A stretch of 26,166 nucleotides of DNA from Leidyana gryllorum EB-2025a (Eukaryota; Protista; Apicomplexa): NCBI GenBank assembly GCA_048772705.1, contig JBLWGC010000096.1:1-26166 (forward strand). Reading direction: 5' to 3'. The notes under the pieces are model-generated. The model was not told the origin of the DNA, did not search any database, and saw only the letters and a program-made list of their open reading frames with translations. Below, one piece after another: positions 1 through 24,821 of the stretch (its first letter is position 1; each line of letters opens with the position of its first letter). Made by a program: the position numbers and the translations under genes.

Positions 1-93
1 CCAAACCTGCACAAACCTCCCAACACCTCCCAACACCTCCCAACACCTCCCAACACCTCCCACACCTCCCTCCCTCCCTCCCTCCCTCCCTAA
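1..93. repeat. C-rich simple repeat: (CAACACCTCC)x4 with degenerate flanking copies, then (TCCC)n ending in CCCTAA
   Basis: Exact 10-mers at 21-60, TCCC run at ~67-90, CCCTAA at 88-93. Abuts the truncated 5' LTR of element A. Confidence 0.85.
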
Positions 94-95
94 TC

Positions 96-269
96 GTTTG
101 GTCGGAACCAATGCACCAACGTGTCTGTGTCTCCGTCTCGGGCCGGCCGGCACGCGGGAGACACAGACAGGAAGATAGATCACGTGAACTTACCTTTTTG
201 TGTGTTGCCCGTTGTTGCGCAATGGACGCCAAGTGGTCGCCGCCGTAGCTAATCCACCGCCGGGTTACA
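96..269 (+). repeat. Element A 5' LTR (partial, with a 42-bp internal deletion)
   Basis: Matches 4815-5030 except for a 42-bp gap after ~211 and one substitution (GTGGTC vs GTGATC). Ends GTTACA. Confidence 0.95.
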
Positions 270-1330
270 TTGGTAGCAGTGCGTCGTTTGAACAGGCCGC
301 GACCGGCCAGGACCCCAACGAAGCACCTCTGGACGACGGACCCACCACGGAAGGGACCTACAACCGTGCTGCGGAAGTCCAGATGGTCATGAACGCCGCT
401 CAAGATCTTTTACGACAGATGGAAGTACTCGCCGAGGCACACCAGACCGGAATCCAGACCAACATCCCCACCAAGAGTGGAAAGGAAACCGCAGCGGTCA
501 CCGACGAGGCCCCGACAGCCCCAAGCCGTCTAGCCCAGGCCGCCCTGAAGAAACAATCAGACTTCACAGGCGAAGATAGCACCTCGGCCCGAGCCTGGCT
601 CGAGGCTTGTGAGGCCAAGTTCGCGGCCTTTGGAATAACAGATCACACAGACCGCATACGCTGCCTGGGGATAATCCTCGGGGGAAGTGCCGCCGAATGG
701 TTCGCGGATACGATTGAGGAAGGACTGCAAGGCACCTGGCAAACTTACCGGAAGCGGTTCCTCGCAGAATTTGAAACGCGAAGCGCAGCGGAGGATGACC
801 TGACCACTTGGGCCGATCTCCGTCGCACTGGGACGATGAGCCAGTATATTACTCAAAGCCGCACGCTCAAAAGACGGTGCGGAAAGGACGTTACCGAACG
901 AGGCGCCACCGCATTCTTTTTCAGAGGACTCCGATCCGAGGACCGCGTGGCTTTGGCTGCGCATGCGGGCAAACCCTTCGACGACTTGTGCCGGGCGGCG
1001 ATGCTATACGCCACGATCACGGACCAACAGATGCTGCAGCAACCGATCGGCTGCAGAGTCAACGCCATCACCAACAACAGCCGAATGGAGCATTCAAGAC
1101 CCCGCACTGTAGGCAAACGTTGTCCCTTCTCGCACGATCAGTGCACGAGCGAAGGACGATGCTACAATTGTGGCGAAGTGGGGCACCGCAACGCCCAATG
1201 CCCCTTACCGAGAGATCCTCGAAACCGAATGCAGCGACCCCGCACGTTCGCCAGCCAAGCCATGGAGGACCCGGATTTTCTGGATCGCCTGAACACCGAG
1301 GAGCCGGTATGTCAGGCAGCGATGCAATAG
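200..1330 (+). CDS. gag: Element A Gag (capsid-like region plus CCHC knuckle); the likely native ATG is lost in the 5' LTR deletion
   Basis: FTG..ARAWL..GSAAEWF capsid-like motifs and CYNCGEVGHRNAQC knuckle. The 3' LTR copy shows in-frame ATGs at 4946 and 4970. Confidence 0.92.
   Translation: MCCPLLRNGRQVVAAVANPPPGYIGSSASFEQAATGQDPNEAPLDDGPTTEGTYNRAAEVQMVMNAAQDLLRQMEVLAEAHQTGIQTNIPTKSGKETAAVTDEAPTAPSRLAQAALKKQSDFTGEDSTSARAWLEACEAKFAAFGITDHTDRIRCLGIILGGSAAEWFADTIEEGLQGTWQTYRKRFLAEFETRSAAEDDLTTWADLRRTGTMSQYITQSRTLKRRCGKDVTERGATAFFFRGLRSEDRVALAAHAGKPFDDLCRAAMLYATITDQQMLQQPIGCRVNAITNNSRMEHSRPRTVGKRCPFSHDQCTSEGRCYNCGEVGHRNAQCPLPRDPRNRMQRPRTFASQAMEDPDFLDRLNTEEPVCQAAMQ
271..282 (+). promoter_or_regulatory. 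Primer binding site TGGTAGCAGTGC (initiator tRNA-Met type)
   Basis: One nt after the LTR end. The identical 12-mer follows the 5' LTRs of B, C and E. Confidence 0.9.
1273..1323 (+). promoter_or_regulatory. Putative -1 ribosomal frameshift signal (G_GAT_TTT plus stem-loop)
   Basis: GGATTTT at 1273-1279 in gag register. GCCTGA..ACCG (1287-1298) pairs with CGGT..TCAGGC (1305-1317). pol is in the -1 frame. Confidence 0.85.
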
Positions 1331-4300
1331 GGCCGGAACCCACTCTGACGGTTCGCTGGACCCTCCGCAATCCCCGCTCCAACGAAGAAGAACTCGCAAC
1401 GGTATTGCTGGACACCGGCAGCAACACAAACTGTGTGGATGCCCGAATGGTACGCCGCTTGCGCCTACCCACAAAACCTTGCGCTGAACGAATTAGTACG
1501 CTTGCGACGACCGATACGCCATGCCGAGAAGAAACCGAACTTACGTTGAAAACCCGAGAACGCCAACAGCTGCCGATCCGCTGCCTCGTTGTTCCGAACC
1601 TACCATACGATTTAATAGTCTCCACATCGACCATCCTTGGACTCCGATTGCTACTAGGACGGAACGCCCAAGGCCACTTGACCGTCATGGAAGGACGAGA
1701 CCTACCGACACAAAAGATAGACCCCCTGTGGCTACGACAGGACAAACACCAAGGACCCACCTGTTGTCAGGTTCTGAGTACCTCGACTGACGCACTGGAC
1801 CTCCCGGATAGCGAAAGATGGATCCATACCGAGTTCCCTTCCGTCTTTCTCCACGACTTACCTATGCCGCCTCACCGAGAAGGGGTGGACCACGCCATCC
1901 AACCCCAAGATCCAACGGCCCTACCCTTCGTGCGGGCCCCATACAAGGTTCCTCAGCGATTCCTGGACGAGATGAGGAAACAAATCGCCGACCTGCGTCG
2001 ACAAGGAAAAATTAGACCAAGCTTCTCGACGTGGGCCTCCCCGTGCCTATTTGTACCCAAGAAGGACACGAGCGTCCCACGCCTCGTGTGCGACTACCGA
2101 AGATTGAACCAAGCAACGGTTCGGGTAGCGTCTCCGATGCCCTCGTTAGAGGAAGCACTTCAAGTACTGGCCGGCGCCACCATATTCTCCACACTTGACC
2201 TAAAAAGCGGATACCATCAAATACGGATGGCTCCGGAGAGCTGTGCCCTTACCGCGTTTTCCACACCATGGGGCCTCTTTGAGTGGACAGTCATGCCCAA
2301 CGGGCTGATGAACGCTTTGGCTACCTTCATGCTTCTAATGAGAATGGTGTTCCATGACCTGATAGGTATCTGCGTCTTCGTTTACCTTGACGACGTCCTG
2401 GTATTCTCGAAGTCCCGCGAAGAGCACCGTTCACACCTGCGACAAGTACTACAACGGCTGAAAGACTACGGATTGATAGCTCACCGGAGAAAGTCACACT
2501 TCTTCCGCACCGAAGTCGATTATATCGGCCATCGAATTTCGGTACAGGGCATAATGCCGCTCACGGACAGAGTAGCGGCCCTGCGGGCAATCCAACCACC
2601 GACGACACTCAAAGAGGCCCAAAGTTTTTTGGGATCCTTCAATTACTACAGGCGTTTTATACCCCACTTCTCCGATATAGCTAAACCTATTTACGATGGC
2701 ACCCATCAACTCAAGTCCCCCAACGCTCCACTGCCAAATAATCCGGCGATCTGGACCGCGGTAAGGAATCTAAAGGAGTCACTCTCCAATGCCACACATC
2801 TTTCCTTCCCACACCCACAATGCAAGGAGCTGTGGGTGACCACAGACGCAAGCGCACACGCATTGGGAGCGGTGCTGGAACAAGGAGAAGAAGGAGGGCG
2901 GGCTCCAATCGAATTCTTTTCAAGAACACTGACGGATGTGGAGAGAAGATATGCTACACACGAGAGGGAACTGCTCAGCATCGTCACCGCATGCAAGCAC
3001 TGGAGACATCTACTGCTCGGGAGAAAGGTTGTCATCCATACGGACCACAAGCCCCTTACGCACTTGCTCAATCAGGCCCACCTGACGGACCGACAACTGA
3101 GATGGATCATCGTCCTGTCTGAATTCGACTTAGAGATCCGCTACATACCCGGAGCAAACAACCTCATAGCGGACCTACTCAGCCGCCCACCCCTCCGCAA
3201 GAACAACGAGAGGATGGAGGCACCGGCACAACAAATAGAGGAAGAGATTGCGACGGTGCATGCTAGTCAAGCCGGGCCGGTGAACCTGGAAGAACGACTA
3301 AGACAAGCCTGGGCCGACCGACGGACATCCCTTGAAGACGCAGAAGAGATCGAGTGGATAGAAGGGCTACCGGTGGAGAAGGACGGCGTTATCCGAGTAC
3401 CACCAGACCCGGAGCTTATACGCCTTATCATCTCATACAACCATGATACCAAATTCGCTGGCCACTTGGGCCCGGACAAGACAGCTGCACGAATACGATC
3501 CCTCTTCAACTGGCGAGGCCTCCAAGCCGATACCGCACAATACTGTCACCAATGCGACGTTTGCCAGCGCGCGAAGAAACGAAACCACCATCCGGCGGGA
3601 TTACTCAACCCCATCAAGAGCCCAATGTTCCCCTGGGAGGATGTGGGTCTCGACTTCCTGGAATTGCCAGAAGACCCGGACACAAGACAAGATTACGTTA
3701 TGGTGGTGGTTGACCGCCTTACCCGGAGAATAAGACTCATCCCATGCATCAAGAATATTACCGCAGCTGAAACAGCCACGCTGTTTATCGAGAATATCGT
3801 TAAAATACATGGGATTCCCCGGCGTATCCTGAGTGACAGAGACCCACGCTTTACATCAACAATATGGAAGGAAATGATGACTCAGCTCGGCGCACAGGTA
3901 AACTTGACCACGGCTTACCACCCGCAGACGAACGGGCTCGTGGAGAGAGCCAACCGTTCGATTCTACAAATGCTCAGATGTACCTTGGAAGGGATCGGCC
4001 ACCGCTGGAGTCACCTCCTTGCTGCAATAGAAATTGCGTACAGCACAGCGAAACAAAGCTCCACAAGATGCTCTCCCTTCGAAATGGATACGGGCCGGAC
4101 GAGCCTACCATTCCGAATCTACGCCCAAAAGCTCCAAGAAGCTTCCGACCGCCTAGCACAGGTCCGCGAAGCACAAAAGCAACAAGCAGACAAACGCAGG
4201 ATGGAAGTCAAATTCGAACCAGGCGACCAAGTATTATTGTCCACTCGCCACCTCCACCACGTCCCGCCGAGCAAGCTGAACTTACCATACTATGGCCCCT

Positions 4301-4488
4301 TGACGGTGATTACGGCCCACGAAGGTGACACTTACACCCTACGCTGTCCAGAAAGTTGGCACATCCATCCCAAGTTCCATGTCTCCAGATTGGAGAAGTA
4401 CCACCAGCCAACGCACCACCGCGCCCCTACACCTGAGGAAAGGGAGACGCGGGCACCCCAGAACGCTAGCCACCGACTCTATACATGA
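1273..4488 (+). CDS. pol: Element A Pol: aspartic protease, RT, RNase H, integrase
   Basis: LLDTGS, LDLKSGYHQ, YLDD, TDAS/TDHKPL, HHCC zinc finger, DDE core and GPY/F module. In frame with ORF 808..4488. Confidence 0.96.
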   Translation, partial: GFSGSPEHRGAGMSGSDAIGPEPTLTVRWTLRNPRSNEEELATVLLDTGSNTNCVDARMVRRLRLPTKPCAERISTLATTDTPCREETELTLKTRERQQLPIRCLVVPNLPYDLIVSTSTILGLRLLLGRNAQGHLTVMEGRDLPTQKIDPLWLRQDKHQGPTCCQVLSTSTDALDLPDSERWIHTEFPSVFLHDLPMPPHREGVDHAIQPQDPTALPFVRAPYKVPQRFLDEMRKQIADLRRQGKIRPSFSTWASPCLFVPKKDTSVPRLVCDYRRLNQATVRVASPMPSLEEALQVLAGATIFSTLDLKSGYHQIRMAPESCALTAFSTPWGLFEWTVMPNGLMNALATFMLLMRMVFHDLIGICVFVYLDDVLVFSKSREEHRSHLRQVLQRLKDYGLIAHRRKSHFFRTEVDYIGHRISVQGIMPLTDRVAALRAIQPPTTLKEAQSFLGSFNYYRRFIPHFSDIAKPIYDGTHQLKSPNAPLPNNPAIWTAVRNLKESLSNATHLSFPHPQCKELWVTTDASAHALGAVLEQGEEGGRAPIEFFSRTLTDVERRYATHERELLSIVTACKHWRHLLLGRKVVIHTDHKPLTHLLNQAHLTDRQLRWIIVLSEFDLEIRYIPGANNLIADLLSRPPLRKNNERMEAPAQQIEEEIATVHASQAGPVNLEERLRQAWADRRTSLEDAEEIEWIEGLPVEKDGVIRVPPDPELIRLIISYNHDTKFAGHLGPDKTAARIRSLFNWRGLQADTAQYCHQCDVCQRAKKRNHHPAGLLNPIKSPMFPWEDVGLDFLELPEDPDTRQDYVMVVVDRLTRRIRLIPCIKNITAAETATLFIENIVKIHGIPRRILSDRDPRFTSTIWKEMMTQLGAQVNLTTAYHPQTNGLVERANRSILQMLRCTLEGIGHRWSHLLAAIEIAYSTAKQSSTRCSPFEMDTGRTSLPFRIYAQKLQEASDRLAQVREAQKQQADKRRMEVKFEPGDQVLLSTRHLHHVPPSKLNLPYYGPLTVITAHEGDTYTLRCPESWHIHPKFHVSRLEKYHQPTHHRAPTPEERETRAPQNASHRLYT

Positions 4489-4810
4489 TGGAGAAGATTA
4501 CAGGAGAACGAGTAACCACAACCGGCCAACTGGAGTACAAAGTGAAGTGGTTGGGATTCTCGGACTCGGCATCTACGTGGGAACCAGCGCAACATGTGCT
4601 CGAAGGAGAAGGCGCGGACCTCATTGCCCAATTCCGCAGAGACTGGAACCAGAGACATCCCGAGGCGCCGTACAACGAAGTGGATGGGGATGTAACACAC
4701 GGTTACCGAACCCCCCTCTGGAGCCCTTGTTGGACCGGCCTACACTACTCCGTCCGGACGAAGGGAGGGCCCTCGGAGGAAGGCTACTACGCCAAAGGCG
4801 GATAGATTGA
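4485..4810 (+). pseudogene. Element A chromodomain and LTR-encoded integrase tail, separated from pol by two small frameshifts
   Basis: YKVKWLGF..STWEP in ORF 4485..4805. The tail GCN..LLDRPTLL..GGRLLRQRRID is in the frame of ORF 4325..4810. Both parts are contiguous with pol in D and F. Confidence 0.88.
4677..4690 (+). promoter_or_regulatory. Element A polypurine tract (appears ~4 nt short)
   Basis: GAAGTGGATGGGGA directly before TGTAAC. Compare F: GAAGTGGCGGGGGAGGGG. Confidence 0.7.
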
Positions 4811-5030
4811 CGGTGTTTGGTCGGAACCAATGCACCAACGTGTCTGTGTCTCCGTCTCGGGCCGGCCGGCACGCGGGAGACACAGACAGGAAGATAGATC
4901 ACGTGAACTTACCTTTTTGTGTGTTGCCCGCTATCCGATAGACCAATGGACTCCTCGAGCGATGCTCCGATGTTGTTGCGCAATGGACGCCAAGTGATCG
5001 CCGCCGTAGCTAATCCACCGCCGGGTTACA
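4691..5030 (+). repeat. Element A 3' LTR, 340 bp
   Basis: TGTAAC...GTTACA termini, preceded by the PPT. Confidence 0.95.
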
Positions 5031-5766
5031 TTCTGTATGTGGAACATCTCCACCTCCATCGCTTGCTTCAGCTCTTCAATCTTCCTCTTGTGTCGATCCT
5101 TGAGCCTCTTAGCCTGCTGAACTGCGGGTTCACCCCAAATGGGCACGCCATGTGTGGCAATGGGTGCGTCAAGGGCTTGAGAGCGAGCCCGAGCGGAGCT
5201 CCCTTGAAGGGGGATGGGTTCCATGTATGCTTGGTGACCCGGTGGGTGGGAGAGAGGTGTTCGAAGAGGAACAGTGTGATTGTGGATGATATCCTCAACC
5301 AACCGTTCGTCTTTGAGTAGGGATGAGGGGGGAGAAGCTGCCGCAGGGGGAAGAAGGGGGGGGAGTTGGGAGGCGCCGGTGGTAGCCGTCGAGACGGTGG
5401 GTGGTCTCTGTCCAAGCCCGAGCGGCTGGGAGAGCGGAGGGCTTGCTGTCGAGGCGGCTTCGGTGAGGTAGGACCGCGTCGGAGCCCTCACAACCATTGT
5501 GGTTGTCGCTTCCACGGGGCTTCGGGCTCGGAGGGCTTTGGAGGGGGACTTACCTGTGTCAGAGAAGGGGGTGAACTTTCAGCGGGCTGGGTAGAGGGGG
5601 TAGCAGGGCTGTTGGGGGGCGACTCGGGAGGCGTGGCCTCGATGGTCTCTTCTTCGAGCTCAGTGTTGCTCGAGGCTTCCATGTTGAGCGTCGTTGGTAC
5701 GCTGGGAAGGGCCAGAGCCTCACCTTGAGCTTCAGTGGGTGCGTCACAAAGGGCTTTCTGTGCCAT
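5031..5766 (-). pseudogene. Repeat U ORF2: Pro/Ser/Thr-rich protein with a distal charged helix, interrupted by element A
   Basis: ATG at 5766 (MAQKALC) after an AT-rich leader. ORFs 5488..5913 and 4931..5515 join if one base is restored in the G4 run at 5516-5519. Confidence 0.55.
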
Positions 5767-5832
5767 GGTCAATCTTAAGCGATACAAAAAACTGGTGGCA
5801 ACTTTGTAATTACAAAAAAATTTGTAACGAGA

Positions 5833-6761: not shown

Positions 6762-6922
6762 CTGCAAGCGGTTCCAGACTTAATAAAAACGTGTTTGTAA
6801 GGTGCGCGTCTCCGTGTGTGCCGGTTTGCCGGTCATCGGAGACGTGATCTATTATACTGGACCAGCTCTGGCTGGCCAGGGACTAAGCAAAACAGGGCTA
6901 TGTAGTGTGACTGGGGTCTACA
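6683..6922 (-). repeat. Element B 3' LTR, 240 bp
   Basis: TGTAG...CTTACA on the minus strand. One mismatch seen vs 9256-9495. PPT GAAGGGGGAGGAG at 6923-6935. Confidence 0.96.
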
Positions 6923-11795: not shown

Positions 11796-12103
11796 TGTGA
11801 CGCGGTGAGTTTAGGTTGTCCCCAGCGGTGCTACCTAGGAGCACTTTACCGTTGCGCAGGATCGTCGAGTCGAGGTTCATGTTCACAAAGGTAAAAGCAC
11901 ACGTGTGTCCGTGTCTCCGCCCGGCCGGCCGGCCGGTCTCCGAGACACAAACAAGCAGGGCGGATTGACCGAGGTCAAGCGCCGTCAGAAATCCGCCTTT
12001 GGCGTAGGTGGTGTCCACCGCAGAGGACTCCGTCTGCTGGATCGAGGAGTGTGGGCCGATCCAGCAGAGCAAGGGGGGTTCGGGGAGGTGTCATTCCGTT
12101 ACA
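11796..12103 (-). repeat. Element D 3' LTR, 308 bp
   Basis: TGTAAC...GTCACA after the PPT GAGGGAGGGG. Has the central hairpin and an ATG at 11880 in the gag-type register. Confidence 0.88.
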
Positions 12104-12841
12104 CCCCTCCCTCACCAGTTCTTGGTAGGGAGCCCGGGGGTGGTGTCGGTTCCAATCTTGTTTGAAGGTCTCGATCAGGTCATCTCCAAGACCTTCCTGA
12201 ACGTGGTGGAGGGGTTCCCAAGTTGCCTCCTCCTCAGGGTAATTTAGCCACTTGACTCGATACCAGAGCTGGCCATCCGCGTCTCGTTTCTCTCCCAGAA
12301 TGCGTTCCATCATGTAGAGCTCTTGCGGTGGGGGTTCCATACGGGGTGAATCGGTACGGGGCATTGAGCGGTCGTGGTAGGGTTCCAGTCGGGATACGTG
12401 GAACTTTGGAAAGAGGTTCCAGGATGCGGGGCAGTCGAGCACGTAAGTGTCGTTAGGGCATACTTCGAGGATCTCCAAGGGGCCGAAGAAGGGTAGATTC
12501 AACTTGTTGGGAGGTACGTGTCGTAGGCCTCGCGTTGCCAGCAGCACCTTCTCGCCAACTGCAAAGCGTCGTACGACTCGATGCTTGTCGTATTGCTCCT
12601 TCTGTCTTTTGGAGGCCTCTTCCAAACGGTCGAGTGCGTCTTGGAGCCGTTGCATGTAGGACGAGAAGGCTCGGGAGTAGTGCGAGGGCAGTATCGTCCG
12701 CGGTGGTAGAAATGATGCACGTCCAGTGTCCAGCTCGAAGGGGGACGCTCTCGTGGACGCTTGACGTGAGGAGTTGTACGCAATCTCGATGAAGGGTAAG
12801 TGCTGATTCCATCTTGTTGTGAGTCCATGGAGAGTGCATCG
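11975..12841 (-). pseudogene. pol: Element D pol, 3' piece: end of integrase, GPY/F module, chromodomain, LTR-encoded tail
   Basis: Open from RCTLHG (12841) through YRVKWLNY..ATWEP to GGHHLRQRRISDGA. Confidence 0.92.
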
Positions 12842-12845
12842 GAGT

Positions 12846-13072
12846 TGTAAGGTACTACACCACCTCTTAAGTTATGTGAACCCTTTTTATTGTGCATGAA
12901 CATGAGCAGCGTGTCTCCCGAGGGAGACACCGGCATTACAAACACGTGCGATCTATAATGACGGTCACCACCAGAAGGGGATCTAAGCTGTCAGTCTTAC
13001 CTAGGTCCCTTACCCAGGGAACCAAGACCAAGACCGGCAAGGCACCGCCGGTGGACGAGCCACCAACTTACA
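12846..13072 (+). repeat. Element E 5' LTR
   Basis: TGTAAG...CTTACA, direct repeat of 17293-17519. Confidence 0.96.
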
Positions 13073-13908
13073 CTGGTAGCAGTGCTTTTGAAGAAGACCA
13101 GCCCAGAACCCAGAATTACATCTTGGACGCTCCCAGAACGGTTTCACAGGACACGATTGCCAAGGACATCAAGCTTGTCACCCAACTAACCAGCTTCTTC
13201 AATGGAAACCAGAACCCACGCACTCATCTAGACAACCTGGAGGCCGCGTTCGATACGCTCATGATACAGGCACAGCATCGAACGCGCATTGCCTGTGGCA
13301 CCCTTAAGGATTCGGCTGCCCGGTGGCTGAACGCCGCAAGCAGAATCATGCCTCTGAGGGAAGTTCCGTGGAACGTATTCGTGGACAGATTCATACAGGA
13401 GTTCGGTACCACTAGCAAAAGTGATTTAGAACAACTCATGGAATTGCGGGCCAACCCGAGAGACCTTACTGGATTTGTGCAGAAAGTGCGCGAACTACGC
13501 CGCGGACTATACAACATTGACGATGAACAGATGCTTCAGATCATCAAACGGGCTCTCGCGGGGTCCGATCGGGACCTCCTGATGACAAGAAACCCACACA
13601 CGCTCGAAGAGGCATTGGAATTTTTGGCGCAACTAGGGCGCGAGCACAGGGGACAACCAGATAGTTACCGGGCCCTGCCAGTGAGACCCAAGGGAGTGGG
13701 CTTCGCTAACCCACATACTCGTGAACATTGTCAGAAGAACCGGCTGTGCTATACTTGCGGTGGGGCAGATCACATAGCGCCAGCCTGCCCAAAACGCACT
13801 AAGCAGCCGGAAAGGAGCGCAAACAGACGAAGCAAAACCTTCCTTATAACCCAAGATTCAGAAACAGAGTTAAGTCCGGCACCGGAGGGATCCAACCAGG
13901 ATTTTTGA
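12958..13908 (+). CDS. gag: Element E Gag (316 aa, ATG inside the LTR)
   Basis: MTVTTRRG...PTYTGSSA, capsid-like region and CYTCGGADHIAPAC knuckle. Confidence 0.92.
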   Translation: MTVTTRRGSKLSVLPRSLTQGTKTKTGKAPPVDEPPTYTGSSAFEEDQPRTQNYILDAPRTVSQDTIAKDIKLVTQLTSFFNGNQNPRTHLDNLEAAFDTLMIQAQHRTRIACGTLKDSAARWLNAASRIMPLREVPWNVFVDRFIQEFGTTSKSDLEQLMELRANPRDLTGFVQKVRELRRGLYNIDDEQMLQIIKRALAGSDRDLLMTRNPHTLEEALEFLAQLGREHRGQPDSYRALPVRPKGVGFANPHTREHCQKNRLCYTCGGADHIAPACPKRTKQPERSANRRSKTFLITQDSETELSPAPEGSNQDF

Positions 13909-13945
13909 TACAGGCCCCGCTCCACACGTTGGGAGACAAGGGGCC
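13899..13945 (+). promoter_or_regulatory. Putative -1 frameshift signal of E
   Basis: G_GAT_TTT immediately before the gag TGA. GGCCCC (13913-13918) pairs with GGGGCC (13940-13945). Confidence 0.88.
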
Positions 13946-16900
13946 ACAAGAACAAGGAACGGAGCAGCCAACCCTAGTCTTTCGAGCAAGCACTCGAAAC
14001 CGCGCAACGGTACTATGGAATCTTGGGTATGGCCCCAACAGACAACAGGTTCTGTGCCTGATTGACTCGGGAGCGGATGTGAACATTCTGGATACTAGCA
14101 TGGCGACGAAGCTAGGAGTCAGGATGAACACCAACAAGACAGCTGTCCTGGAGGGCATAGGTGAACGCAGAAGCACCGCAGAAGCAACAGCAGACCTTTA
14201 CACCTCCAGCGGGAGGAAATGGAGAATGCGGTTTGTGGTCACTAACATAACCCCGTTTGATCTGATAGTGGGCGTCTCAGGCATTATGGAATTGGGGCTT
14301 GCGATCGGCACAGACTCAAGCGGACAACTGACGATTCTGGAGGAGAAAGTACTCACAAACAATGAAACAGAGAACCGATTGTTAGTCTCAATAGCAGCAG
14401 CGCAGACGGTGGAAGTTCCAGCCGAGGAAGAATGGATTGCTCAGGAATATGGTGAGATATTCAAGTCACCAACCGAACTACCTCCGTCTCGGGGGTTTCA
14501 CGATTTCGAGATTGACTTGCAACCGCACGCAGTTCCGTGTGCGGAGAGGGCCTATGGCGCCTCAAGCAGGAATAGGGCGGAGATGGACCAGCAGATAGCG
14601 GACCTACTTACCAAAGGATTCATCAGACCATCAAAATCGGCATGGGGGGCACCGTGCTTCCTGGTTCCGAAGAAGGACACGGCTACTCCACGTCTAGTGA
14701 TCAATTATAAGCAACTGAACGAACAAACAGTGGTATACGCTTACCCAATTCCACGACCTGACCTATCAGCAGCCGAGTTACGGCAGGCAACAGTCTTCTC
14801 AAAATTGGATCTCCGCTCCGGATACCATCAGATCCAAATCAGAGAACCCTTCCGTCATCTCACGGCCTTCACAGCGCCTGGTGGGAAATACGAGTGGAAC
14901 GTGCTACCGTTTGGCTTACGCAATGGCCCACCTGCCTTTGTAGCGTTCATTGAGGATATTCTGCGACCGTGGATCGGCAAATGCGCGATGGCATATGTCG
15001 ATGACATCCTAGTGTATAGCCCCACCAGGGAGAAACATCGGGAAGATGTCAGAAATATTTTAACAGCCCTGCGGGACCATCAATTGCGGGTACATCCGCA
15101 AAAATCAGCCTTTTTTATCACCGAGGTGGATTTCATTGGGCAACGACTGGACACCAATGGCATACATCCGGCAGAGAACAAGCGGAATGCCTTTGCGGAA
15201 GCAGAACCACCGGCCACGATGGCCGAGCTGAGGAGGGTGCTTGGCGGAATGACATTTTACTCGAAGTACATCAAAGGATTCGCGCAACTGGCACTCCCAT
15301 TCCATGACATGGTGGCCGAGTGCCGCTCAAAGGCGGAAAGGTTAAAGTGGAACAATGACTTGACTGACAGATGGAGGCGACTGACAGGGGCGTTTGGGGA
15401 CCCACTGACACTGGCCGTGGTGGATGATTCGCTACCCTTCCACGTGGCAACGGATGCGAGCAGCAAAGCGATTGGAGGAGTACTGGAACAGAGGAGAGGG
15501 GACGAGCGACGTATAATTGAATATTTTAGTGCCAAGCTGACCCCGACTCAACAGAATTGGGCAGTACATGAACGTGAACTATACGCGATCATGGCGGCCC
15601 TGAAACGATGGCGTCATTACCTTCTCAGCAGGGAATTCTTCGTCCACACTGATCACAAGCCCTTAACGGTGCTCAACAAAGCGGATTCAGCGCTCAGCCC
15701 CAAACTGGTAAGGTGGTTAGTGAAAATCTCGCAGTACCCAGCACGTATTGATTACGTCCCCGGAAGCCAGAACACGCTTGCGGATATCTTGAGCAGGGTG
15801 GGCACAACGTCAGCCAAACAAATGATATACATGGCAAGACAAGCGAACGGCACCGATTTCACGAGAGCATTGAAAGAGGCACATGACAGAGTCACGGTGG
15901 TACCGGACGGCTTCGAGCAAACGAATGGATGGATTCATGACGAGTTTGGACGACTGTTTGTGCCAGCCGAGAGCGACTTAAGACGGACGGTATTGACAGA
16001 GAGCCATGATTCGGCCATCAGTGGACATATGGCTCACGACCGCACCCTTTTCAGACTCCGCAGCCAATTTAACTGGCCTGGCATCACGGAAGACGTCAGG
16101 ACATACTGCCGACAGTGTCCGACTTGTCAGCGGAGCAAGGTCTTACCCAAACGCACGCTTGGATTACTCAACCCAATCCCACCGCCCGAACTGCCATGGC
16201 AGGAGATTTCAATTGACTTCCTGTCGATGCCAACCGACCCAGACTCCGGAGCTGACTCAATTATGACGATCATCGATCGCCTAACAAGACGTCTACTACT
16301 GGAACCCTTCACTCACCCTGCCACGGCCCGAGCAAGTGCCCAGACGCTGATGAATCGGGTAGTCAGGGAGCATGGTTTCCCTAAAGCCATAATCTGCGAC
16401 AGAGACAGTCGATGGCTTGGAGAAGTATGGAGCGAATTACTCACCATCACCGGAACGAAATTGAAACCCAGCACCAGAGGTCATCCTCAAACCAATGGCC
16501 TAGTCGAGAGAGCTCACCGTACACTCCTGCAGTCCTTAAGATGCCTCTGCGACTCTATTGGACCTCGATGGACAGCGAAATTAGCCTCAGTCGAGTTTGC
16601 CTTCAACTCAATGAGAAACGCCTCGACGCAGCTCTCACCGTTCGAGGCTGAGCGCGGTTACACCCCCGCGATACCACTGACTGCAGGACTGCCTACCACC
16701 AGCATGGGAGACGGATTACTACACTCTGAACTGATCACGATCCTTCAGGACAGAATCAGATCCGCGCAGGACAAGCAGAAGGTACAACACGACAAAGACG
16801 AGAGGAGGCGAGTCTCCAAGTGGGCGATTGGACGCTGGTAAAAACCAGTGGTGTCCGCGGCGCCCCAGGAGGAAAGCTAGCGAAGCCGTACATGGGACCC

Positions 16901-17297
16901 TTCAGGGTACGAACGGCGCAACCAGGAGATGTGTATGAGCTGAGCATGCCGACGAGATGGCAGGGATGCTCCAGGTTTCACATTTCACGGCTACGCAAGT
17001 ACGAAGGAACACCACCAGCAACCGAACAAGACACTCTGTACCAGATGGAAGAGAATCTTGGCAGAGAGCAAGGGCGCACGAGGAACTCGTTACCTCGTCA
17101 AGTGGCAGGGCTACCCGAGAAGTGAGGCAACATGGGAACCACTGACTACGATCATCAATGCCGACGCCACTGATCTAGTCATACAATACAGAGAACGATG
17201 GAACGAACGCAATCCGAGGAACCCATTCACTGAGAGTGAACTAAGGGGGACCGATTTAATTCCGCTTACGCAGCAGGCGATGGAGGGAGGAGTGTAA
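13899..17297 (+). CDS. pol: Element E Pol (PR, RT, RH, IN, chromodomain) with two single-base indels at ~16795 and ~17050
   Basis: LIDSGA, LDLRSGYHQ, YVDD, TDAS, HHCC and DDE. ORFs 13905..16841, 16820..17125 and 17058..17297 join as DKRREEASLQVGD and YQMERILAES..YLVKWQGY..TWEP. Confidence 0.93.
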
Positions 17298-17519
17298 GGT
17301 ACTACACCACCTCTTAAGTTATGTGAACCCTTTTTATTGTGCATGAACATGAGCAGCGTGTCTCCCGAGGGAGACACCGGCATTACAAACACGTGCGATC
17401 TATAATGACGGTCACCACCAGAAGGGGATCTAAGCTGTCAGTCTTACCTAGGTCCCTTACCCAGAGAACCAAGACCAAGACCGGCAAGGCACCGCCGGTG
17501 GACGAGCCACCAACTTACA
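17293..17519 (+). repeat. Element E 3' LTR
   Basis: Direct repeat of 12846-13072. Confidence 0.96.
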
Positions 17520-20154: not shown

Positions 20155-21018
20155 TCCACTTCAGCTCCGTGTACGGTGAAGATTTGGGGTCCTTGCGGTC
20201 GTTGTGAGGATCGTTTCATCGTGTCCTTGGGGACCGGGCATTGGGCGTTTCGGTGCCCGGTGTTACCACAGTTATAGCATCGTCCTTCCGCAGTGCATTG
20301 GTCGTACGAGAATTGGTTTCGCTTTCCGACGAATTTCCCACGAGTCGGGGGATTCCGGCTCTGAATGGTGGCTATCATTGCGTGCTCTTGAATTGGATTA
20401 GTTGCCGCGTAAAGGAGAGCTCGTTGGCATATGTCCGCGAAGGATGCGTCGGCATGTGCTGCCAGGGCGACTCTTTCTTGTGTGGACAAGCCTCGGAAGA
20501 AGAATGCTACTGCTGTACTTTCCGTGACTGCCGGTCCACACCGGCGGCGTAGTGTGCGGTTTTGGGTCACATACTCCTTCATTGATCCTCGTTTGCGAAG
20601 GTCCGCCCATTTCGTGATATCGTTTTCGCCCGCATGTTCAGTAGCGAACTCCTTCAAGAATTCGTTTCGAAAGGTTGTCCAAGATGAATACTGGTTCGTA
20701 TCACTGCCGTTGACAAACCACTCTGCCGCAGATCCTGCGAGGTTTGCCCCGATTGCTGCTATTCTGTCCGTCGTTTCTTCGACTCCGTATGCCTTGAATT
20801 TTGCCTCACAAGACTCGATCCAGGAACGGGCGTCCGTAGCGTTGTCCCCCGTGAACTCCGTGGTCTTTTTCAAGGCTGTCATGGCCGTCTGGGAGGGGCT
20901 TGGCGATGCTGCGTGTTGCGTTGGTAAGTTTCGTTGTTCGTGCTCTGGGTTAACCTCTGATCTACTTGTCGTTGCCTGATCTATCCGTTCGCAGAGGCGG
21001 CTCATCATGTCCATCGTA
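20100..21018 (-). pseudogene. gag: Element D gag, 5'-truncated by the F insertion
   Basis: Clear homologue of A Gag (FTGD..ARSW, GSAAEWF, CYNCGNTGHRNAQC). Confidence 0.9.
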
Positions 21019-21377
21019 TGTAATGGCCATCGGTTCCGTGGGCGTTGTCGGTGAGTTCTCGGCCACTACGTAATTGCATCTTAGATACTTCGTTCGCAGG
21101 TTCAGTGGTCATGCCGGTCGGTTCGCACGTAATCAAAAAGGTGAGTTCACACGGTGATCTAACTGTGTGTCCCCCCCGTGTCTCCGGCCGGCCGGCCGGC
21201 GCGCCGGAGACACAGACACGATGAGGACGGACTGGCTTCGGTTGGACGTCGTCAAACGCCTCGGTGACGGAGTAGCCTTCCCCCGACGCTGGTGCCTTGG
21301 GTCGGTTCTAGCGTCGGGGCTCTATCGAGGAGGGGTGTTCGTTGCGACGATGTCGGCATTGGCTCTAAAGTGTTACA
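21019..21377 (-). repeat. Element F 3' LTR, 359 bp
   Basis: Terminal TGTAA/TTACA, PPT, central hairpin, and an ATG at 21112 opening a frame that ends TAC-A. Confidence 0.9.
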
Positions 21378-24300
21378 CCCCTCCCCCGCCACTTCCGTGT
21401 AGGGCGCGTTGGGGTGAGTCCGGTTCCAGTCGTGCTTGAACTGCTCGATGAGATCGTGTCCGTCACCGTCGAGGACCGCTCGGGCGGGTTCCCAGGTCGC
21501 ATCTCCTTCGGGGTAGCCCATCCACTTCACGAGATACTCGGCCTCCCCCGTGGTTGAGATGCGTTCGCCGAGGAGTCGCTCCATCATGAACAGCGGCGCC
21601 GATTCAGGTGGGGGCCGATTGGGGTCTGCGCTTGGTTGTTGGGAAGTCGTAGTAGGTCCATCCTGTGGATCTTGATGGAACGGTTCCAGCCGAGATACAT
21701 GGAACTTTGGATAGATGTTCCAGGTGGCCGGGCATTCGAGTGTGTAGGTGTCCCCACTATGGGCCGCGAGAACGGTGATGGGACCGAAGTACGGAAGGCG
21801 GAGTTTATGAGGAGGAAGATGGCGAAGGTTTTTTGTGGAAAGCAACACCTGGTCCCCCGGTTTGAATACCACAAGTCTGCGCCTCTTGTCGGCCTGTGCC
21901 TTCTGATGTAGTGAGGCTTGGTCAAGTCTGTCCCGAGCTTCTTGCAAGCGTTGTGCGAATAGTCTGAAGGTAAGCGAATGTTGGCTGGGAAGTACGTCAC
22001 GCGAGGGTAGGAAGTCGGGGCGTCCGGTATCTAGCTCAAAAGGGGAGGCCCTAGTGGAAGCGTGCCGTGCTGTGTTATATGCTATCTCAATCGTGGTCAA
22101 GTGTCGGCTCCAATGTTGTCCTATCCCTTGTAAGGTGCATCGCAGCAGTTGAAGTATCGCTCTATTGACACGTTCGACCATTCCATTCGTCTGGGGGTGG
22201 TACACTGTAGTCAAGGTCAGCCGAGCCCCCAGCTGTCTCATTAGAGAGGTCCACAATTCCGACGTGAATCGTGGGTCGCGGTCACTCAAGATCCGACGTG
22301 GTACTCCATGTAATTTCACGATGTTTTGGATGAAGAGTGAAGCAGCTTCCTCGGCGTTGATACTTTTGTGGCATGCCGTAAGACGAATGCGTCGGGTAAG
22401 TCGGTCTACGACAACCATGACGTAGTCTTGTGTGGTATCTGGATCCGCAGGTAATTCAAGGAAGTCTATCCCCACCTCCTCCCATGGGAATAGTGGGTTG
22501 CGGAGGGGGTTGAGCAGCCCGGCGGGGTGATGGTTCCGCCGTTTGGCCTTTTGACAGATTTCGCACAGATGGCAGTATTGGGAGACGTCTGCCTGGAGAC
22601 CTTTCCACTGGAAGAGCGTTCGTACCCGAGCGGCCGTTTTATCCGGCCCCAAGTGACCAGCTAATCGTGAGTCGTGGTTCATCGCTATAATGTCCTTAAT
22701 TAGGTCGGTTTCGGCGGGGACTAAGATTGTGCCGTCGGTGCCTATCGGTAAGCCGTCAATCCACTCTACGTCGGTCGGTAATGCAAGTTCGTCCTTTCGC
22801 TCTGCCCAGCTGCGTCTTAATCGTTGTTCGATTGGTTCTGGCTGGTTGATCGTGTATGTCTGAGCGCGGGCCGTCACGCTCCGTGGTGGTTGAGTGGTAA
22901 TAGGGCGGCTCAAAAGGTCCGCAATCAGATTGTTGACTCCTGGGATATATCGAATCTCTAGGTCTAGTTCAGCGAGAACTGTCATCCACCGAAGCTGTCG
23001 ATCGGAAAGGTGCGCTTGCTGTAACAGGTGGGTCAAGGGTTTGTGATCCGTCTGTATGATCACTTTTCGTCCGAGCAGTAAGTGTCTCCAATGGCGGCAG
23101 GCAGCTACGATCGCCAGCATTTCCCGTTCGTGGGTGGCGTATCGTGATTCGGTGTCCGTGAGGGTGCGGGAAAAGAACTCAATGGGTCGGCGTCCTTCTG
23201 GCTCCGGTTGCTCCAGCACCCCTCCCATCGCTACCGCACTGGCATCGGTGGTTACCCACAGCTCCTCGCAGTCTGCTCCAGGGAAGGCAAGGAGCGTGGC
23301 CTGGTGTAGTCCTTCGCGTAGTGCGTGAACGGCCGTGCTGATAGCTGGATCGTTCGGTAAGGGGGCGTTTGGTCCTTTTAAACCGTGGGTTGCGGCGTAG
23401 AGGGGGTGTGCGACGGTTGCAAAATTTGGGATGAATCTTCGATAGTAGTTGAAGGACCCGAGCAAACTTTGGGCTTCCCGCAGAGTGGTTGGTACGGATA
23501 TGGCCTTGATGGCTTCAATCCGTGTGGCCAACGGCATGATACCCGCTGCGGAAATCCTATGTCCTAAGTATTCCACTTCGTGTTGGAAGAAATGGGATTT
23601 GCGACGGTGAGCCACCAGTTGATGCTTCTTCAGTCGATCCAAAACTTTGCGCAGGTGACAGCGGTGATCTTCAAGCGTGCGTGAAAAGACCAGGACGTCA
23701 TCCAGGTAAATGAAGACGTATTCACCGACCATCTCGCTGAATACTTGGTGCATCAGTAGCATGAAAGTTGCGGGAGCGTTCATAAGGCCATTGGGCATAA
23801 CGGCCCACTCGAAGAGCCCCCATGGGGTCACAAACGCGGTAAGAGGACGGCTGTCCGGCGCCATGAGTACCTGGTGGTACCCACTCTTCAGATCCAAGGT
23901 GCTGAAAATGGTGGCTCCGGCGAGAACTTGCAACGCTTCATCCAAGGACGGCATCGGCGAGGCCACGCGGACGGTTGCCTGATTCAGTCTGCGGTAATCG
24001 CAAACAAGTCGGGGGACCGCTGTGTCCTTCTTGGGGACAAAAAGACATGGTGATGCCCACGAGGAGGAGCTGGGCACAATCTTCTCGGTTCGGACCAAGT
24101 CCAAAAGTTGGCCGCGCATCTCCTGTAAGTATCGCTGCGGAACCTTGTACGGCTGGCGTACATAGGGTGGCGCGTTGGGCTGATGGAGAGTGATCCGGTG
24201 ATCAATACCCGGACGTGTCGGGGGCATCGGTAAGTGGTCTCGGAATACCGATGGGAATTCCTCTTCGATCCATTTCTCATCTGGTGGTAGGTCAAGTGGT

Positions 24301-24821
24301 TGAGCGGGAACCGACGATTGAATGGCGTAGGTCACGGGTCGATCACCCGACTCCGGTCTAATCCAGCCTTCGTGAACAGCCGGCGGTGGTAAGTCCTGTC
24401 CTTCTACCACTCCGAGGGTGCCTTCCCTCGTACGTCCCAGTAGAAGCTTTAAGTTGAGAATCGTGGAAGTGGACACAATCAGGTCAAATTCCAGGTACGG
24501 GATCACAGCGCATGTGATCGGGAGTTGCTGTCCACGGACGGTTCGGATCGTGATTTCGGTTTCTCGGGAGCATTCGGTGTTGTCCGGGGATATCGTGCCT
24601 AGTTGCATTTGGCATCGGCGGGTGGTAAGTCGAAGTTTGTCCACGATTCGGGCGGCGAGGCAGTTGGTGTTACTGCCGGTATCCAATAGTACGTTTGCGG
24701 TGAGTTCGGTGTCGGAGCGCGGGTTGCGTATGGTCCATCGGACGGTGAGCGGCGGTGATGTCCCTACTGCAGTTCCTCCTGATCGGTCGACTCCTGGGCC
24801 GTCAGGGACTCGAGAAAATCC
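21252..24821 (-). CDS. pol: Element F Pol: PR, RT, RH, IN, chromodomain and LTR-encoded tail, uninterrupted
   Basis: ORF 21252..24686 is open upstream to the slippery site at 24821-24815. All catalytic motifs are present. Confidence 0.96.
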   Translation of the reverse strand, partial: GFSRVPDGPGVDRSGGTAVGTSPPLTVRWTIRNPRSDTELTANVLLDTGSNTNCLAARIVDKLRLTTRRCQMQLGTISPDNTECSRETEITIRTVRGQQLPITCAVIPYLEFDLIVSTSTILNLKLLLGRTREGTLGVVEGQDLPPPAVHEGWIRPESGDRPVTYAIQSSVPAQPLDLPPDEKWIEEEFPSVFRDHLPMPPTRPGIDHRITLHQPNAPPYVRQPYKVPQRYLQEMRGQLLDLVRTEKIVPSSSSWASPCLFVPKKDTAVPRLVCDYRRLNQATVRVASPMPSLDEALQVLAGATIFSTLDLKSGYHQVLMAPDSRPLTAFVTPWGLFEWAVMPNGLMNAPATFMLLMHQVFSEMVGEYVFIYLDDVLVFSRTLEDHRCHLRKVLDRLKKHQLVAHRRKSHFFQHEVEYLGHRISAAGIMPLATRIEAIKAISVPTTLREAQSLLGSFNYYRRFIPNFATVAHPLYAATHGLKGPNAPLPNDPAISTAVHALREGLHQATLLAFPGADCEELWVTTDASAVAMGGVLEQPEPEGRRPIEFFSRTLTDTESRYATHEREMLAIVAACRHWRHLLLGRKVIIQTDHKPLTHLLQQAHLSDRQLRWMTVLAELDLEIRYIPGVNNLIADLLSRPITTQPPRSVTARAQTYTINQPEPIEQRLRRSWAERKDELALPTDVEWIDGLPIGTDGTILVPAETDLIKDIIAMNHDSRLAGHLGPDKTAARVRTLFQWKGLQADVSQYCHLCEICQKAKRRNHHPAGLLNPLRNPLFPWEEVGIDFLELPADPDTTQDYVMVVVDRLTRRIRLTACHKSINAEEAASLFIQNIVKLHGVPRRILSDRDPRFTSELWTSLMRQLGARLTLTTVYHPQTNGMVERVNRAILQLLRCTLQGIGQHWSRHLTTIEIAYNTARHASTRASPFELDTGRPDFLPSRDVLPSQHSLTFRLFAQRLQEARDRLDQASLHQKAQADKRRRLVVFKPGDQVLLSTKNLRHLPPHKLRLPYFGPITVLAAHSGDTYTLECPATWNIYPKFHVSRLEPFHQDPQDGPTTTSQQPSADPNRPPPESAPLFMMERLLGERISTTGEAEYLVKWMGYPEGDATWEPARAVLDGDGHDLIEQFKHDWNRTHPNAPYTEVAGEGCNTLEPMPTSSQRTPLLDRAPTLEPTQGTSVGGRLLRHRGV

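What the first reader, a model, noticed from the sequence alone, without database searches (positions are those of the whole stretch)
4691..4810. Integrase tail encoded inside the 3' LTR, conserved as protein and ending in a foamy-Gag-like chromatin motif
Seen: in D and F pol runs through the PPT ~40 codons into U3, and A has the same frame after a small indel. Tails: A CN..PLLDRPTLLRPDEGRALGGRLLRQRRID; D CN..ALLDRPTLLDPADGVLCGGHHLRQRRISDGA (12103-11975); F CN..PLLDRAPTLEPTQGTSVGGRLLRHRGV (21377-21252). B and E instead stop at EGG(G)V using the LTR's first TGTAG/TGTAA. Established: plant CRM elements extend a putative targeting motif into the 3' LTR, and prototype foamy virus Gag binds the H2A-H2B acidic patch through GGYNLRPR. 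Inference: a bivalent targeting module made of a methyl-lysine chromodomain plus an arginine-anchor tail.
Basis: partly seen in the sequence, partly recalled or inferred. Interest (0 to 1): 0.82.

Follow-up and report, generated by a model that had tools for sequence, protein, structure and literature searches.

The report
Integrase tail encoded in the LTR
In many retrotransposon families of this small eukaryotic genome, the first 95-130 bases of the long terminal repeat encode a conserved, disordered tail of the integrase. The tail is kept by selection as protein, but its suggested role as a nucleosome-docking peptide is untested.

Summary
The window is a nest of Ty3/gypsy chromoviruses.

- **Reading frame.** In D (12103-11975, minus) and F (21377-21252, minus), pol reads through the polypurine tract and the TGTAAC start of the LTR for about 41-43 codons. 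In A (4691-4810) the same tail is present but out of frame in this damaged copy.
- **LTR boundary.** Identical solo or 5' LTR copies elsewhere begin exactly at TGTAAC. One complete element has a 5-bp target duplication.
- **Spread.** At least 12 families share an ungapped 25-codon block, PLLD[RQ]P..L.P..G...GG..LR.R. A tail profile matches 52 places in the genome, none with a stop.
- **Selection.** Synonymous sites are near saturation while residues are kept: omega 0.15, and 2dlnL is about 93 against omega = 1. pN/pS is 0.42, like the chromodomain (0.39), against 1.2-1.3 in the other two sense frames.
- **Structure.** The tail is predicted to be disordered.
- **Precedent.** An ORF running into the 3' LTR is known in plant CRM and Reina elements. 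I therefore file this as a new variant of a known kind.
- **Foamy Gag likeness.** It is only a pattern match (GG..LR.R). The tyrosine that is strictly conserved in foamy viruses is absent, and the complex prediction gave no verdict.

Other first-stage notes on other pieces of this genome describe the same tail.

The parts
4691..4810 (+). Element A: tail-coding start of the 3' LTR (TGT at 4691 to the TGA at 4808-4810). It is out of frame with the chromodomain in this copy.
   Evidence: A4 profile match at 4691-4807
4691..5032 (+). Element A 3' LTR (TGTAAC...GTTACA), with a 42-nt insertion at 4931-4972 relative to the 5' copy
4680..4690 (+). Element A polypurine tract, 4 nt shorter than in D, F and the C6 family
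96..271 (+). Element A 5' LTR remnant. The tail-coding part is missing: bases 1-95 are simple repeats at the contig start.
11975..12103 (-). Element D: tail codons plus stop, encoded by the first 129 nt of the 3' LTR
11796..12103 (-). Element D 3' LTR (308 nt), with 100% identical copies on contigs C170 and C43
11975..12655 (-). Element D integrase C-terminus ORF: SH3_Tf2-1, chromodomain, tail
21252..21377 (-). Element F: tail codons plus stop, encoded at the start of the 3' LTR
21023..21377 (-). Element F 3' LTR (TGTAAC...TTACA). It abuts the gag of D without a primer binding site.
21252..24686 (-). Element F pol ORF (RT, RNase H, integrase, SH3, chromodomain, tail), 1144 codons, open
6918..6922 (-). 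Element B (tail-less): pol stops at the TAG inside the LTR's first TGTAG
17293..17297 (+). Element E (tail-less): the chromodomain frame stops at the TAA inside the LTR's first TGTAA

Best explanation
Shown: in one clade of chromoviruses in this genome, the 5' end of the LTR (presumably U3) is protein-coding when it sits in the 3' LTR. Pol is read through the polypurine tract and the first 94-129 nt of the LTR. This adds 31-43 residues to the integrase after a canonical chromodomain with its three aromatic-cage residues. The addition has two parts. The first is a variable proline-rich linker whose length differs only by whole codons. The second is an ungapped 25-residue block with invariant L-L-D, L, G, G, L-R. 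The block evolves under purifying selection as strong as on the chromodomain, and it is predicted to be disordered. In form it is a short linear motif at the very C-terminus of integrase. Inferred: it works as a docking peptide that gives the integrase or intasome a second contact with chromatin or with a host factor, beside methyl-lysine reading by the chromodomain. Because the peptide is written in the LTR, it is copied to both ends at each cycle. My odds: real selected coding extension 0.9; a docking or tethering role of some kind about 0.5; within that, an arginine anchor on the H2A-H2B acidic patch about 0.2.
For: Continuous ORFs through the PPT into the LTR in D and F. The LTR start is fixed by identical LTR copies that begin at TGTAAC. 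It is also fixed by complete elements: L064 has LTRs 97.9% identical, TSD CTAAG, and pol ending 117 nt into the LTR; L065 has 100% identical LTRs and pol ending 94 nt into the LTR. Twelve or more families carry the block. The tail profile matches 52 places in the genome, none with a stop. Mean pairwise differences at codon positions 1, 2 and 3 are 0.33, 0.28 and 0.65; pN/pS is 0.41 in frame against 1.16 and 1.26 in the other sense frames. By region, pN/pS is 0.39 for the chromodomain and 0.42 for the tail block. Omega is 0.154, with lnL -710.5 against -757.1 for omega = 1. At the invariant residues pS is 0.81 and pN 0.09, and codons outside the search pattern still give 0.61. Two groups read the LTR start in different phases (TGT AAC = CN; gaT GTT AGC = DVS) yet keep the block in frame, across at least six linker lengths. 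Tailed families cluster in one starred clade. AF2 gives pLDDT about 90 for the chromodomain and 46-59 for the tail. An independent public contig (L063, 65-69% DNA identity to this genome's families) carries the tail.
Against: No functional evidence of any kind exists. The complex prediction gave no verdict, and no relative was found in the PDB or Pfam. Sister families without the tail are equally abundant and sit in the same nests: B and E lie in this window, and E is inserted in D. The tail is therefore dispensable for transposition and for landing in these clusters. Sequences were gathered by protein similarity, so some ascertainment bias enters the dN/dS figures, although it cannot create saturated synonymous sites. 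The transcription start is unmapped, so calling the segment 'U3' is an assumption.
Confidence: 0.55

Rival explanations
1. The tail is specifically an arginine-anchor peptide. Its invariant Leu-Arg inserts into the H2A-H2B acidic patch as in PFV Gag or LANA, making the integrase a bivalent nucleosome reader.
For: The GG..LR.[RH] pattern is present in 11 of 12 families, and one family reads GGRQLRPR. In PFV Gag, L539 and R540 are contact residues. The tail is disordered and terminal, like known anchors. The host H2A keeps the acidic-patch residues. The pattern did not occur in six-frame translations of 79 unrelated chromodomain loci.
Against: Y537, strictly conserved in foamy viruses, has no counterpart: the tail has Arg or His there. 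The equally invariant LLD...L...G half of the block is unexplained by this model. The comparator was chosen after the fact from many arginine-anchor peptides. No binding evidence exists (one search gave no answer).
Confidence: 0.2
2. The tail is a nuclear or nucleolar localisation signal that brings integrase or the pre-integration complex into the nucleus.
For: The tail ends in an arginine cluster (R..LR.RR). Arginine-rich boxes of PFV Gag act as nucleolar signals. C-terminal nuclear localisation signals in yeast Ty integrases are known (my own knowledge, not checked here).
Against: Invariant Leu, Asp and Gly residues 10-20 positions upstream are not needed for a basic import signal. Several families end after only LR.R or LRRH. 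Tail-less sister families manage without it.
Confidence: 0.15
3. The conservation reflects DNA or RNA function of the LTR end (integrase att site, promoter or enhancer, PPT context), and the open frame is incidental.
For: The LTRs do carry conserved non-coding blocks further downstream: CCAAT-like sequences and a GTCTC...CCGGCCGG...GAGAC inverted repeat. The PPT-encoded codons show lowered pS (0.48).
Against: In the tail block third positions are near saturation (0.65; pS 0.72-0.81) while residues are kept. The other two sense frames give pN/pS above 1 and contain stops. The one antisense frame with a low ratio shares wobble positions with the sense frame and has stops. Linker indels are all multiples of three.
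Confidence: 0.03
4. The tail binds a host protein other than histones (a tether in the manner of MLV integrase with BET proteins or Ty5 integrase with Sir4), or it acts within the intasome on target DNA.
For: The form is that of a conserved linear motif at the integrase C-terminus. A targeting peptide in an integrase C-terminal tail has precedent in MLV IN-BET (PMC4027182, listed; the rest is my own knowledge). The hydrophobic and acidic LLD.P..L half looks like a protein-docking element.
Against: No partner can be named. The alternating hydrophobic-basic pattern of BET ET-domain ligands is met in only two families.
Confidence: 0.3

Closest known systems
CRM group A centromeric chromoviruses of plants (CR motif encoded in the 3' LTR) and Reina-clade Bingo elements of Beta vulgaris
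   Same: The gag-pol or pol ORF runs past the polypurine tract into the 3' LTR, so a putative targeting peptide of integrase is written in the LTR (PMC3059260; PMC3605345).
   Different: In CRM the CR motif takes the place of the chromodomain and lies downstream of the PPT. Here a canonical chromodomain with its three aromatic-cage residues lies upstream of the PPT, and the LTR adds a further, separately conserved linear motif. Sequence likeness to the CR motif was not tested. For Bingo elements, the passages I read report no conserved tail motif.
Prototype foamy virus Gag chromatin-binding sequence (residues 534-546; R540 arginine anchor on the H2A-H2B acidic patch)
   Same: A glycine/arginine-rich, disordered context with a GG..LR.R pattern. 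Leu-Arg is invariant here and corresponds to the contact residues L539 and R540.
   Different: It lies in Gag, not integrase. The Tyr (Y537) strictly conserved in foamy viruses is Arg or His here. No binding data exist, and the upstream LLD.P..L.P..G half has no counterpart.
Type I chromodomain chromoviruses of fungi and other eukaryotes (MAGGY, Tf1 and Tcn1-like elements)
   Same: Ty3/gypsy order PR-RT-RH-IN, the SH3_Tf2-1 domain, and a chromodomain with the full aromatic cage at the integrase C-terminus.
   Different: As far as I know, those elements end pol at or before the PPT (my own knowledge, not checked here). The tail-less sister clade in this genome does the same, stopping in the LTR's first TGTAA or TGTAG.

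Membership tests
Chromovirus (Ty3/gypsy LTR retrotransposon with integrase chromodomain) | Pol domain order RT, RNase H, integrase, followed by a C-terminal chromodomain | tested here: met
   Pfam matches RVT_1, RT_RNaseH, Integrase_H2C2, rve, SH3_Tf2-1 and Chromo in F, with the same set spread over A and D
Chromovirus (Ty3/gypsy LTR retrotransposon with integrase chromodomain) | LTRs with terminal inverted repeats, a PBS after the 5' LTR, a PPT before the 3' LTR, and a target site duplication | tested here: met
   L064 has TGTAAC...GTTACA LTRs, TSD CTAAG, PBS TGGTAGCAGTG and a purine run before the LTR. The window's own copies are partly truncated.
Type I chromodomain | Three aromatic cage residues | tested here: met
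   Y/F, W and Y are present at the expected alignment positions in both tailed and tail-less families. Methyl-lysine binding itself was not tested.
CRM-type integrase targeting domain encoded in the LTR | The ORF continues past the PPT into the 3' LTR | tested here: met
CRM-type integrase targeting domain encoded in the LTR | A CR motif in place of a chromodomain, lying downstream of the PPT | tested here: not met
   A canonical chromodomain lies upstream of the PPT. Sequence likeness of the tail to the CR motif was not tested, because no CR sequence was at hand.
Foamy virus Gag chromatin-binding motif | Invariant anchor arginine preceded by a hydrophobic residue | tested here: met
   L-R is invariant in 10 of 10 aligned families
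Foamy virus Gag chromatin-binding motif | A strictly conserved tyrosine three residues before the anchor (Y537) | tested here: not met
   That position holds Arg or His in all families. For conservation of the Tyr in foamy viruses see PMC6042332.
Foamy virus Gag chromatin-binding motif | Binding to the H2A-H2B acidic patch | tested here: inconclusive
   The complex prediction with the host's H2A and H2B and the F tail returned 'no answer'. This needs a bench test.
Classical basic nuclear localisation signal | A cluster of four or more K/R residues, sufficient for import | not testable with these tools
   R..LR.RR is present in the CN group, but only LR.R or LRRH in some families. Import needs an experiment.

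The most novel reading that the evidence does not exclude
The integrase of these elements is a bivalent nucleosome reader. The chromodomain binds methylated H3, and the LTR-encoded tail places its invariant Leu-Arg in the H2A-H2B acidic patch. It would be the first retrotransposon integrase with an arginine-anchor tether, and its targeting peptide would be carried in the LTR.
Probability: 0.2. Interest if true: 0.8.

Novelty: new variant of a known kind. Interest (0 to 1): 0.55.

Why it matters
U3 is usually treated as fast-evolving regulatory DNA. Here its first 100 or so bases are held by selection on a peptide across families whose integrase C-termini are only 44-60% identical. This gives a compact, testable candidate for a second targeting determinant in chromoviruses, beside the chromodomain. 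Natural tail-less sister families in the same genome serve as controls. It also bears on annotation: pol ORFs of such elements should not be cut at the LTR boundary, and conservation at the LTR's 5' end should not be read as promoter conservation.

Tried and rejected
- **Complex prediction.** Host H2A (L059, residues 20-125), H2B (L058, residues 30-123) and the F tail scored 0.00. The verdict was 'no answer', and I take it as no evidence either way.
- **Word-index protein search.** F residues 1020-1144 gave no hit at E <= 0.001.
- **Exhaustive profile search.** Chromodomain plus tail against 1.84 billion representatives: among the best 150, only one protein (P0010) matches through the tail. 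The rest are chromodomain-only matches, most of them multi-chromodomain proteins. P0010 is a singleton from one Logan contig.
- **Metagenome scan.** It returned 80 chromodomain loci. The 79 that I scanned held no tail motif. L085, a contig labelled as human gut metagenome, was left out of the scan.
- **PDB and Pfam.** Searches with the tail profile found nothing.
- **Sequencing runs.** None was listed, so there is no expression evidence, and read laying was not used.
- **Host organism.** I tried to place it with the protein atlas, using the integrase C-terminus and an HSP70.
- **Loss in tail-less families.** I considered that they had lost the tail by a recent stop codon. Their LTRs hold no remnant of the block, except two lineages inside the tailed clade that are truncated.
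- **Other motif classes.** I considered PxVxL-type HP1-binding motifs and BET ET-domain-binding motifs. The invariant positions do not fit.

Full report
**What the window is.** The 26-kb window is contig C96 of a 15.5-Mb, 237-contig eukaryotic assembly. It is a nest of Ty3/gypsy chromoviruses.
- Element A (plus strand, 1-5032) has gag, pol and a 3' LTR at 4691-5032 with TGTAAC...GTTACA ends. Of its 5' LTR only 96-271 survives; bases 1-95 are simple repeats at the contig start.
- Element D (minus strand) is a single element split by the insertion of E (12841-17519). E is flanked by a GAGT duplication. D's integrase C-terminus is ORF 11975-12655, and its 3' LTR is 11796-12103.
- Element F (minus strand) has an open 1144-codon pol (21252-24686) and a 3' LTR from 21377 down to about 21023.
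- B and E belong to tail-less families.

**Checking the observation.** In A the purine run ends at 4690 and TGTAAC begins at 4691. The frame from 4691 reads the reported tail to the TGA at 4808-4810.
- That frame is not the chromodomain's frame in this copy. Pol is in phase 1 (808-4488), the chromodomain in phase 0 (open to the TAG at 4803-4805), and the tail in phase 2 (ORF 4325-4810).
- Against D, F and the nearest family, A is 4 nt shorter inside the polypurine tract. A is the only internal copy of its family in the genome. I describe where it is broken and nothing more.
- In D and F the frame is continuous from SH3_Tf2-1 and Chromo through the PPT into the LTR, with 60 residues after the Pfam chromodomain match.

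**Is it really inside the LTR?** Yes.
- The D tail DNA (12103-11975) recurs at 100% identity at three other places. The match starts exactly at the T of TGTAAC, and the flanks are unrelated. The whole 308-nt LTR is shared.
- A complete element on contig C6 (L064) has LTRs at 568-946 and 5412-5792 (97.9% identical), a CTAAG target duplication and a PBS. Its pol stops 117 nt inside the 3' LTR, and the 5' LTR carries the same tail-coding bases.
- A second element (L065) has 100% identical LTRs, and its pol stops 94 nt inside the LTR.
- Whether the segment is U3 in the strict sense depends on the unmapped transcription start.

**How widespread is it?** A six-frame search of the genome with the D C-terminus gave 143 matches.
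- At least 12 distinct families carry the tail.
- They share an ungapped 25-residue block, PLLD[RQ]P..L.P..G...GG..LR.R. L-L-D, L, G, G and L-R are invariant in ten aligned families.
- The block follows a proline-rich linker of 6 to 13 residues.
- One group reads the LTR start as TGT AAC (Cys-Asn). The other reads gaT GTT AGC (Asp-Val-Ser), a different phase relative to the first LTR base. Both keep the block in frame.
- A profile of the tail alone finds 52 places in the genome, none with a stop. About 14 are joined to long pol frames; the rest are solo or 5' LTRs.
- On a tree of the SH3-chromodomain region, tailed families fall in one well-supported clade (97/94) as two subclades. Two secondarily truncated lineages sit inside that clade, and the tail-less families form the sister clade. 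The label needs two changes, and 0 of 500 shuffles did as well.
- Tail-less LTRs hold no remnant of the block.
- Both classes keep the three aromatic cage residues of the chromodomain. The tail is therefore an addition and does not replace the chromodomain.

**Protein-level or DNA-level conservation?** Protein-level.
- Across 11 families, mean pairwise difference is 0.33, 0.28 and 0.65 at codon positions 1, 2 and 3.
- Uncorrected pN/pS is 0.41 in the tail frame, against 1.16 and 1.26 in the other two sense frames.
- By region, pN/pS is 0.39 for the chromodomain, 0.79 for the PPT-encoded codons (where pS is depressed, as expected for a cis element), 0.78 for the linker and 0.42 for the tail block.
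- One antisense frame shares wobble positions and so mimics the low ratio, but it has stops.
- A Goldman-Yang codon model gives omega 0.154. lnL is -710.48, against -757.14 for the best omega = 1 fit, so 2dlnL is about 93.
- The sequences were gathered by protein similarity, so I split the codons to check for ascertainment bias. Those fixed by my search pattern have pS 0.81 and pN 0.09: the synonymous sites are randomised, which similarity-based gathering cannot produce. The 16 codons outside the pattern still give 0.61, against 1.05 and 1.20 in the shifted frames.

**What kind of peptide is it?**
- AlphaFold2 on the ten-family alignment folds the chromodomain with pLDDT about 90 and leaves the tail at 46-59.
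- Neither Pfam nor the PDB sequence set matches the tail.
- It therefore looks like a short linear motif in a disordered C-terminal extension.
- Outside this genome I found it only once. It occurs in a 317-residue ORF on a 2.8-kb Logan contig (P0010, L063), whose DNA is only 65-69% identical to the families here.
- None of the 79 metagenome chromodomain loci I scanned has it. Retrotransposon ORFs are poorly represented in protein sets, so this absence is weak evidence.

**The foamy Gag comparison.**
- The review PMC9040877 confirms that PFV Gag contacts H2A-H2B through Y537, L539 and the anchor R540.
- PMC6042332 states that Y537 and R540 are the strictly conserved residues among foamy viruses, and that R542 is not.
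- The tail matches GG..LR.R, and its Leu-Arg is invariant. It has Arg or His at the Tyr position, and its equally invariant N-terminal half has no foamy counterpart.
- The host H2A keeps the acidic-patch residues, so the model is possible.
- A three-chain complex prediction with the host's own H2A, H2B and the F tail gave no verdict. I count it neither for nor against.
- I put the acidic-patch reading at about 0.2. A docking role of some kind, whether histone, host factor or intasome, I put at about 0.5. A nuclear import signal I put at about 0.15.
- One observation counts against any essential role. Tail-less families are as numerous and share the same nests: E is inserted in D, and B lies next to A.

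**Comparison with what is known.**
- An ORF running into the 3' LTR is established for plant CRM group A elements, where the LTR encodes the CR motif. It is also established for several Reina-clade Bingo elements.
- The present case differs. It keeps a canonical type I chromodomain upstream of the PPT and adds a separately conserved linear motif from the LTR.
- I therefore class it as a new variant of a known kind. It is not a member of the CR-motif group: that defining feature was tested and not met.
- Other first-stage notes on other pieces of this genome describe the same tail. They are unverified, and I did not use them as evidence.

**Limits.** The organism could not be named. No expression data were available. 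All functional statements are inference.

Noticed in passing
window 1-95: The contig starts with (CCAACACCTC)n and (CCCT)n simple repeats, which take the place of the first ~125 nt of A's 5' LTR. This may be a truncation, an assembly end or chromosome-end healing.
   Followed up: partly
window 4931-4972: A 42-nt insertion in A's 3' LTR relative to its 5' LTR. The LTR pair is otherwise almost identical (116 nt at 100%).
   Followed up: partly
window 21014-21030: The F-type LTR ends at TTACA and abuts the gag ATG of D with no primer binding site. D's own 3' LTR (11796-12103) is of a different type, roughly 60-65% alike by eye in the alignment. D therefore lacks its own 5' LTR, giving an F-LTR-D arrangement.
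   Followed up: partly
L064:809-946 and L065:998-1292: The open frame of gag begins inside the 5' LTR, so both ends of these LTRs may be coding. Another first-stage note says the same.
   Followed up: no
window 4836-4870, 12000-11960, 21215-21175: Just downstream of the tail's stop codon, a conserved GTCTC...CCGGCCGG...GAGAC inverted repeat is shared by otherwise dissimilar LTRs.
   Followed up: no
G000 contigs C104 (about 1.25 Mb), C230 (about 1.58 Mb) and C2 (about 0.2 Mb): Forty HSP70-family matches in a 15.5-Mb genome, many in tandem arrays. This is an unusual expansion.
   Followed up: no
L052 (G000:C230:313710-314075) and L051: Histone H3 has a divergent N-terminus (MTKTKHAARKST...) that still holds two ARKS sites. 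The H2A and H2B acidic-patch residues are kept.
   Followed up: partly
L012 (G000:C201:44722-45306): One family inside the tailed clade has a short, unrelated extension into the LTR (CN plus 10 residues). Another (L016) stops just before the PPT. These look like secondary losses.
   Followed up: partly
G000:C43:87000-205000: Many chromovirus and LTR hits cluster in about 120 kb of a 553-kb contig. This may be a centromere or a heterochromatin island.
   Followed up: no
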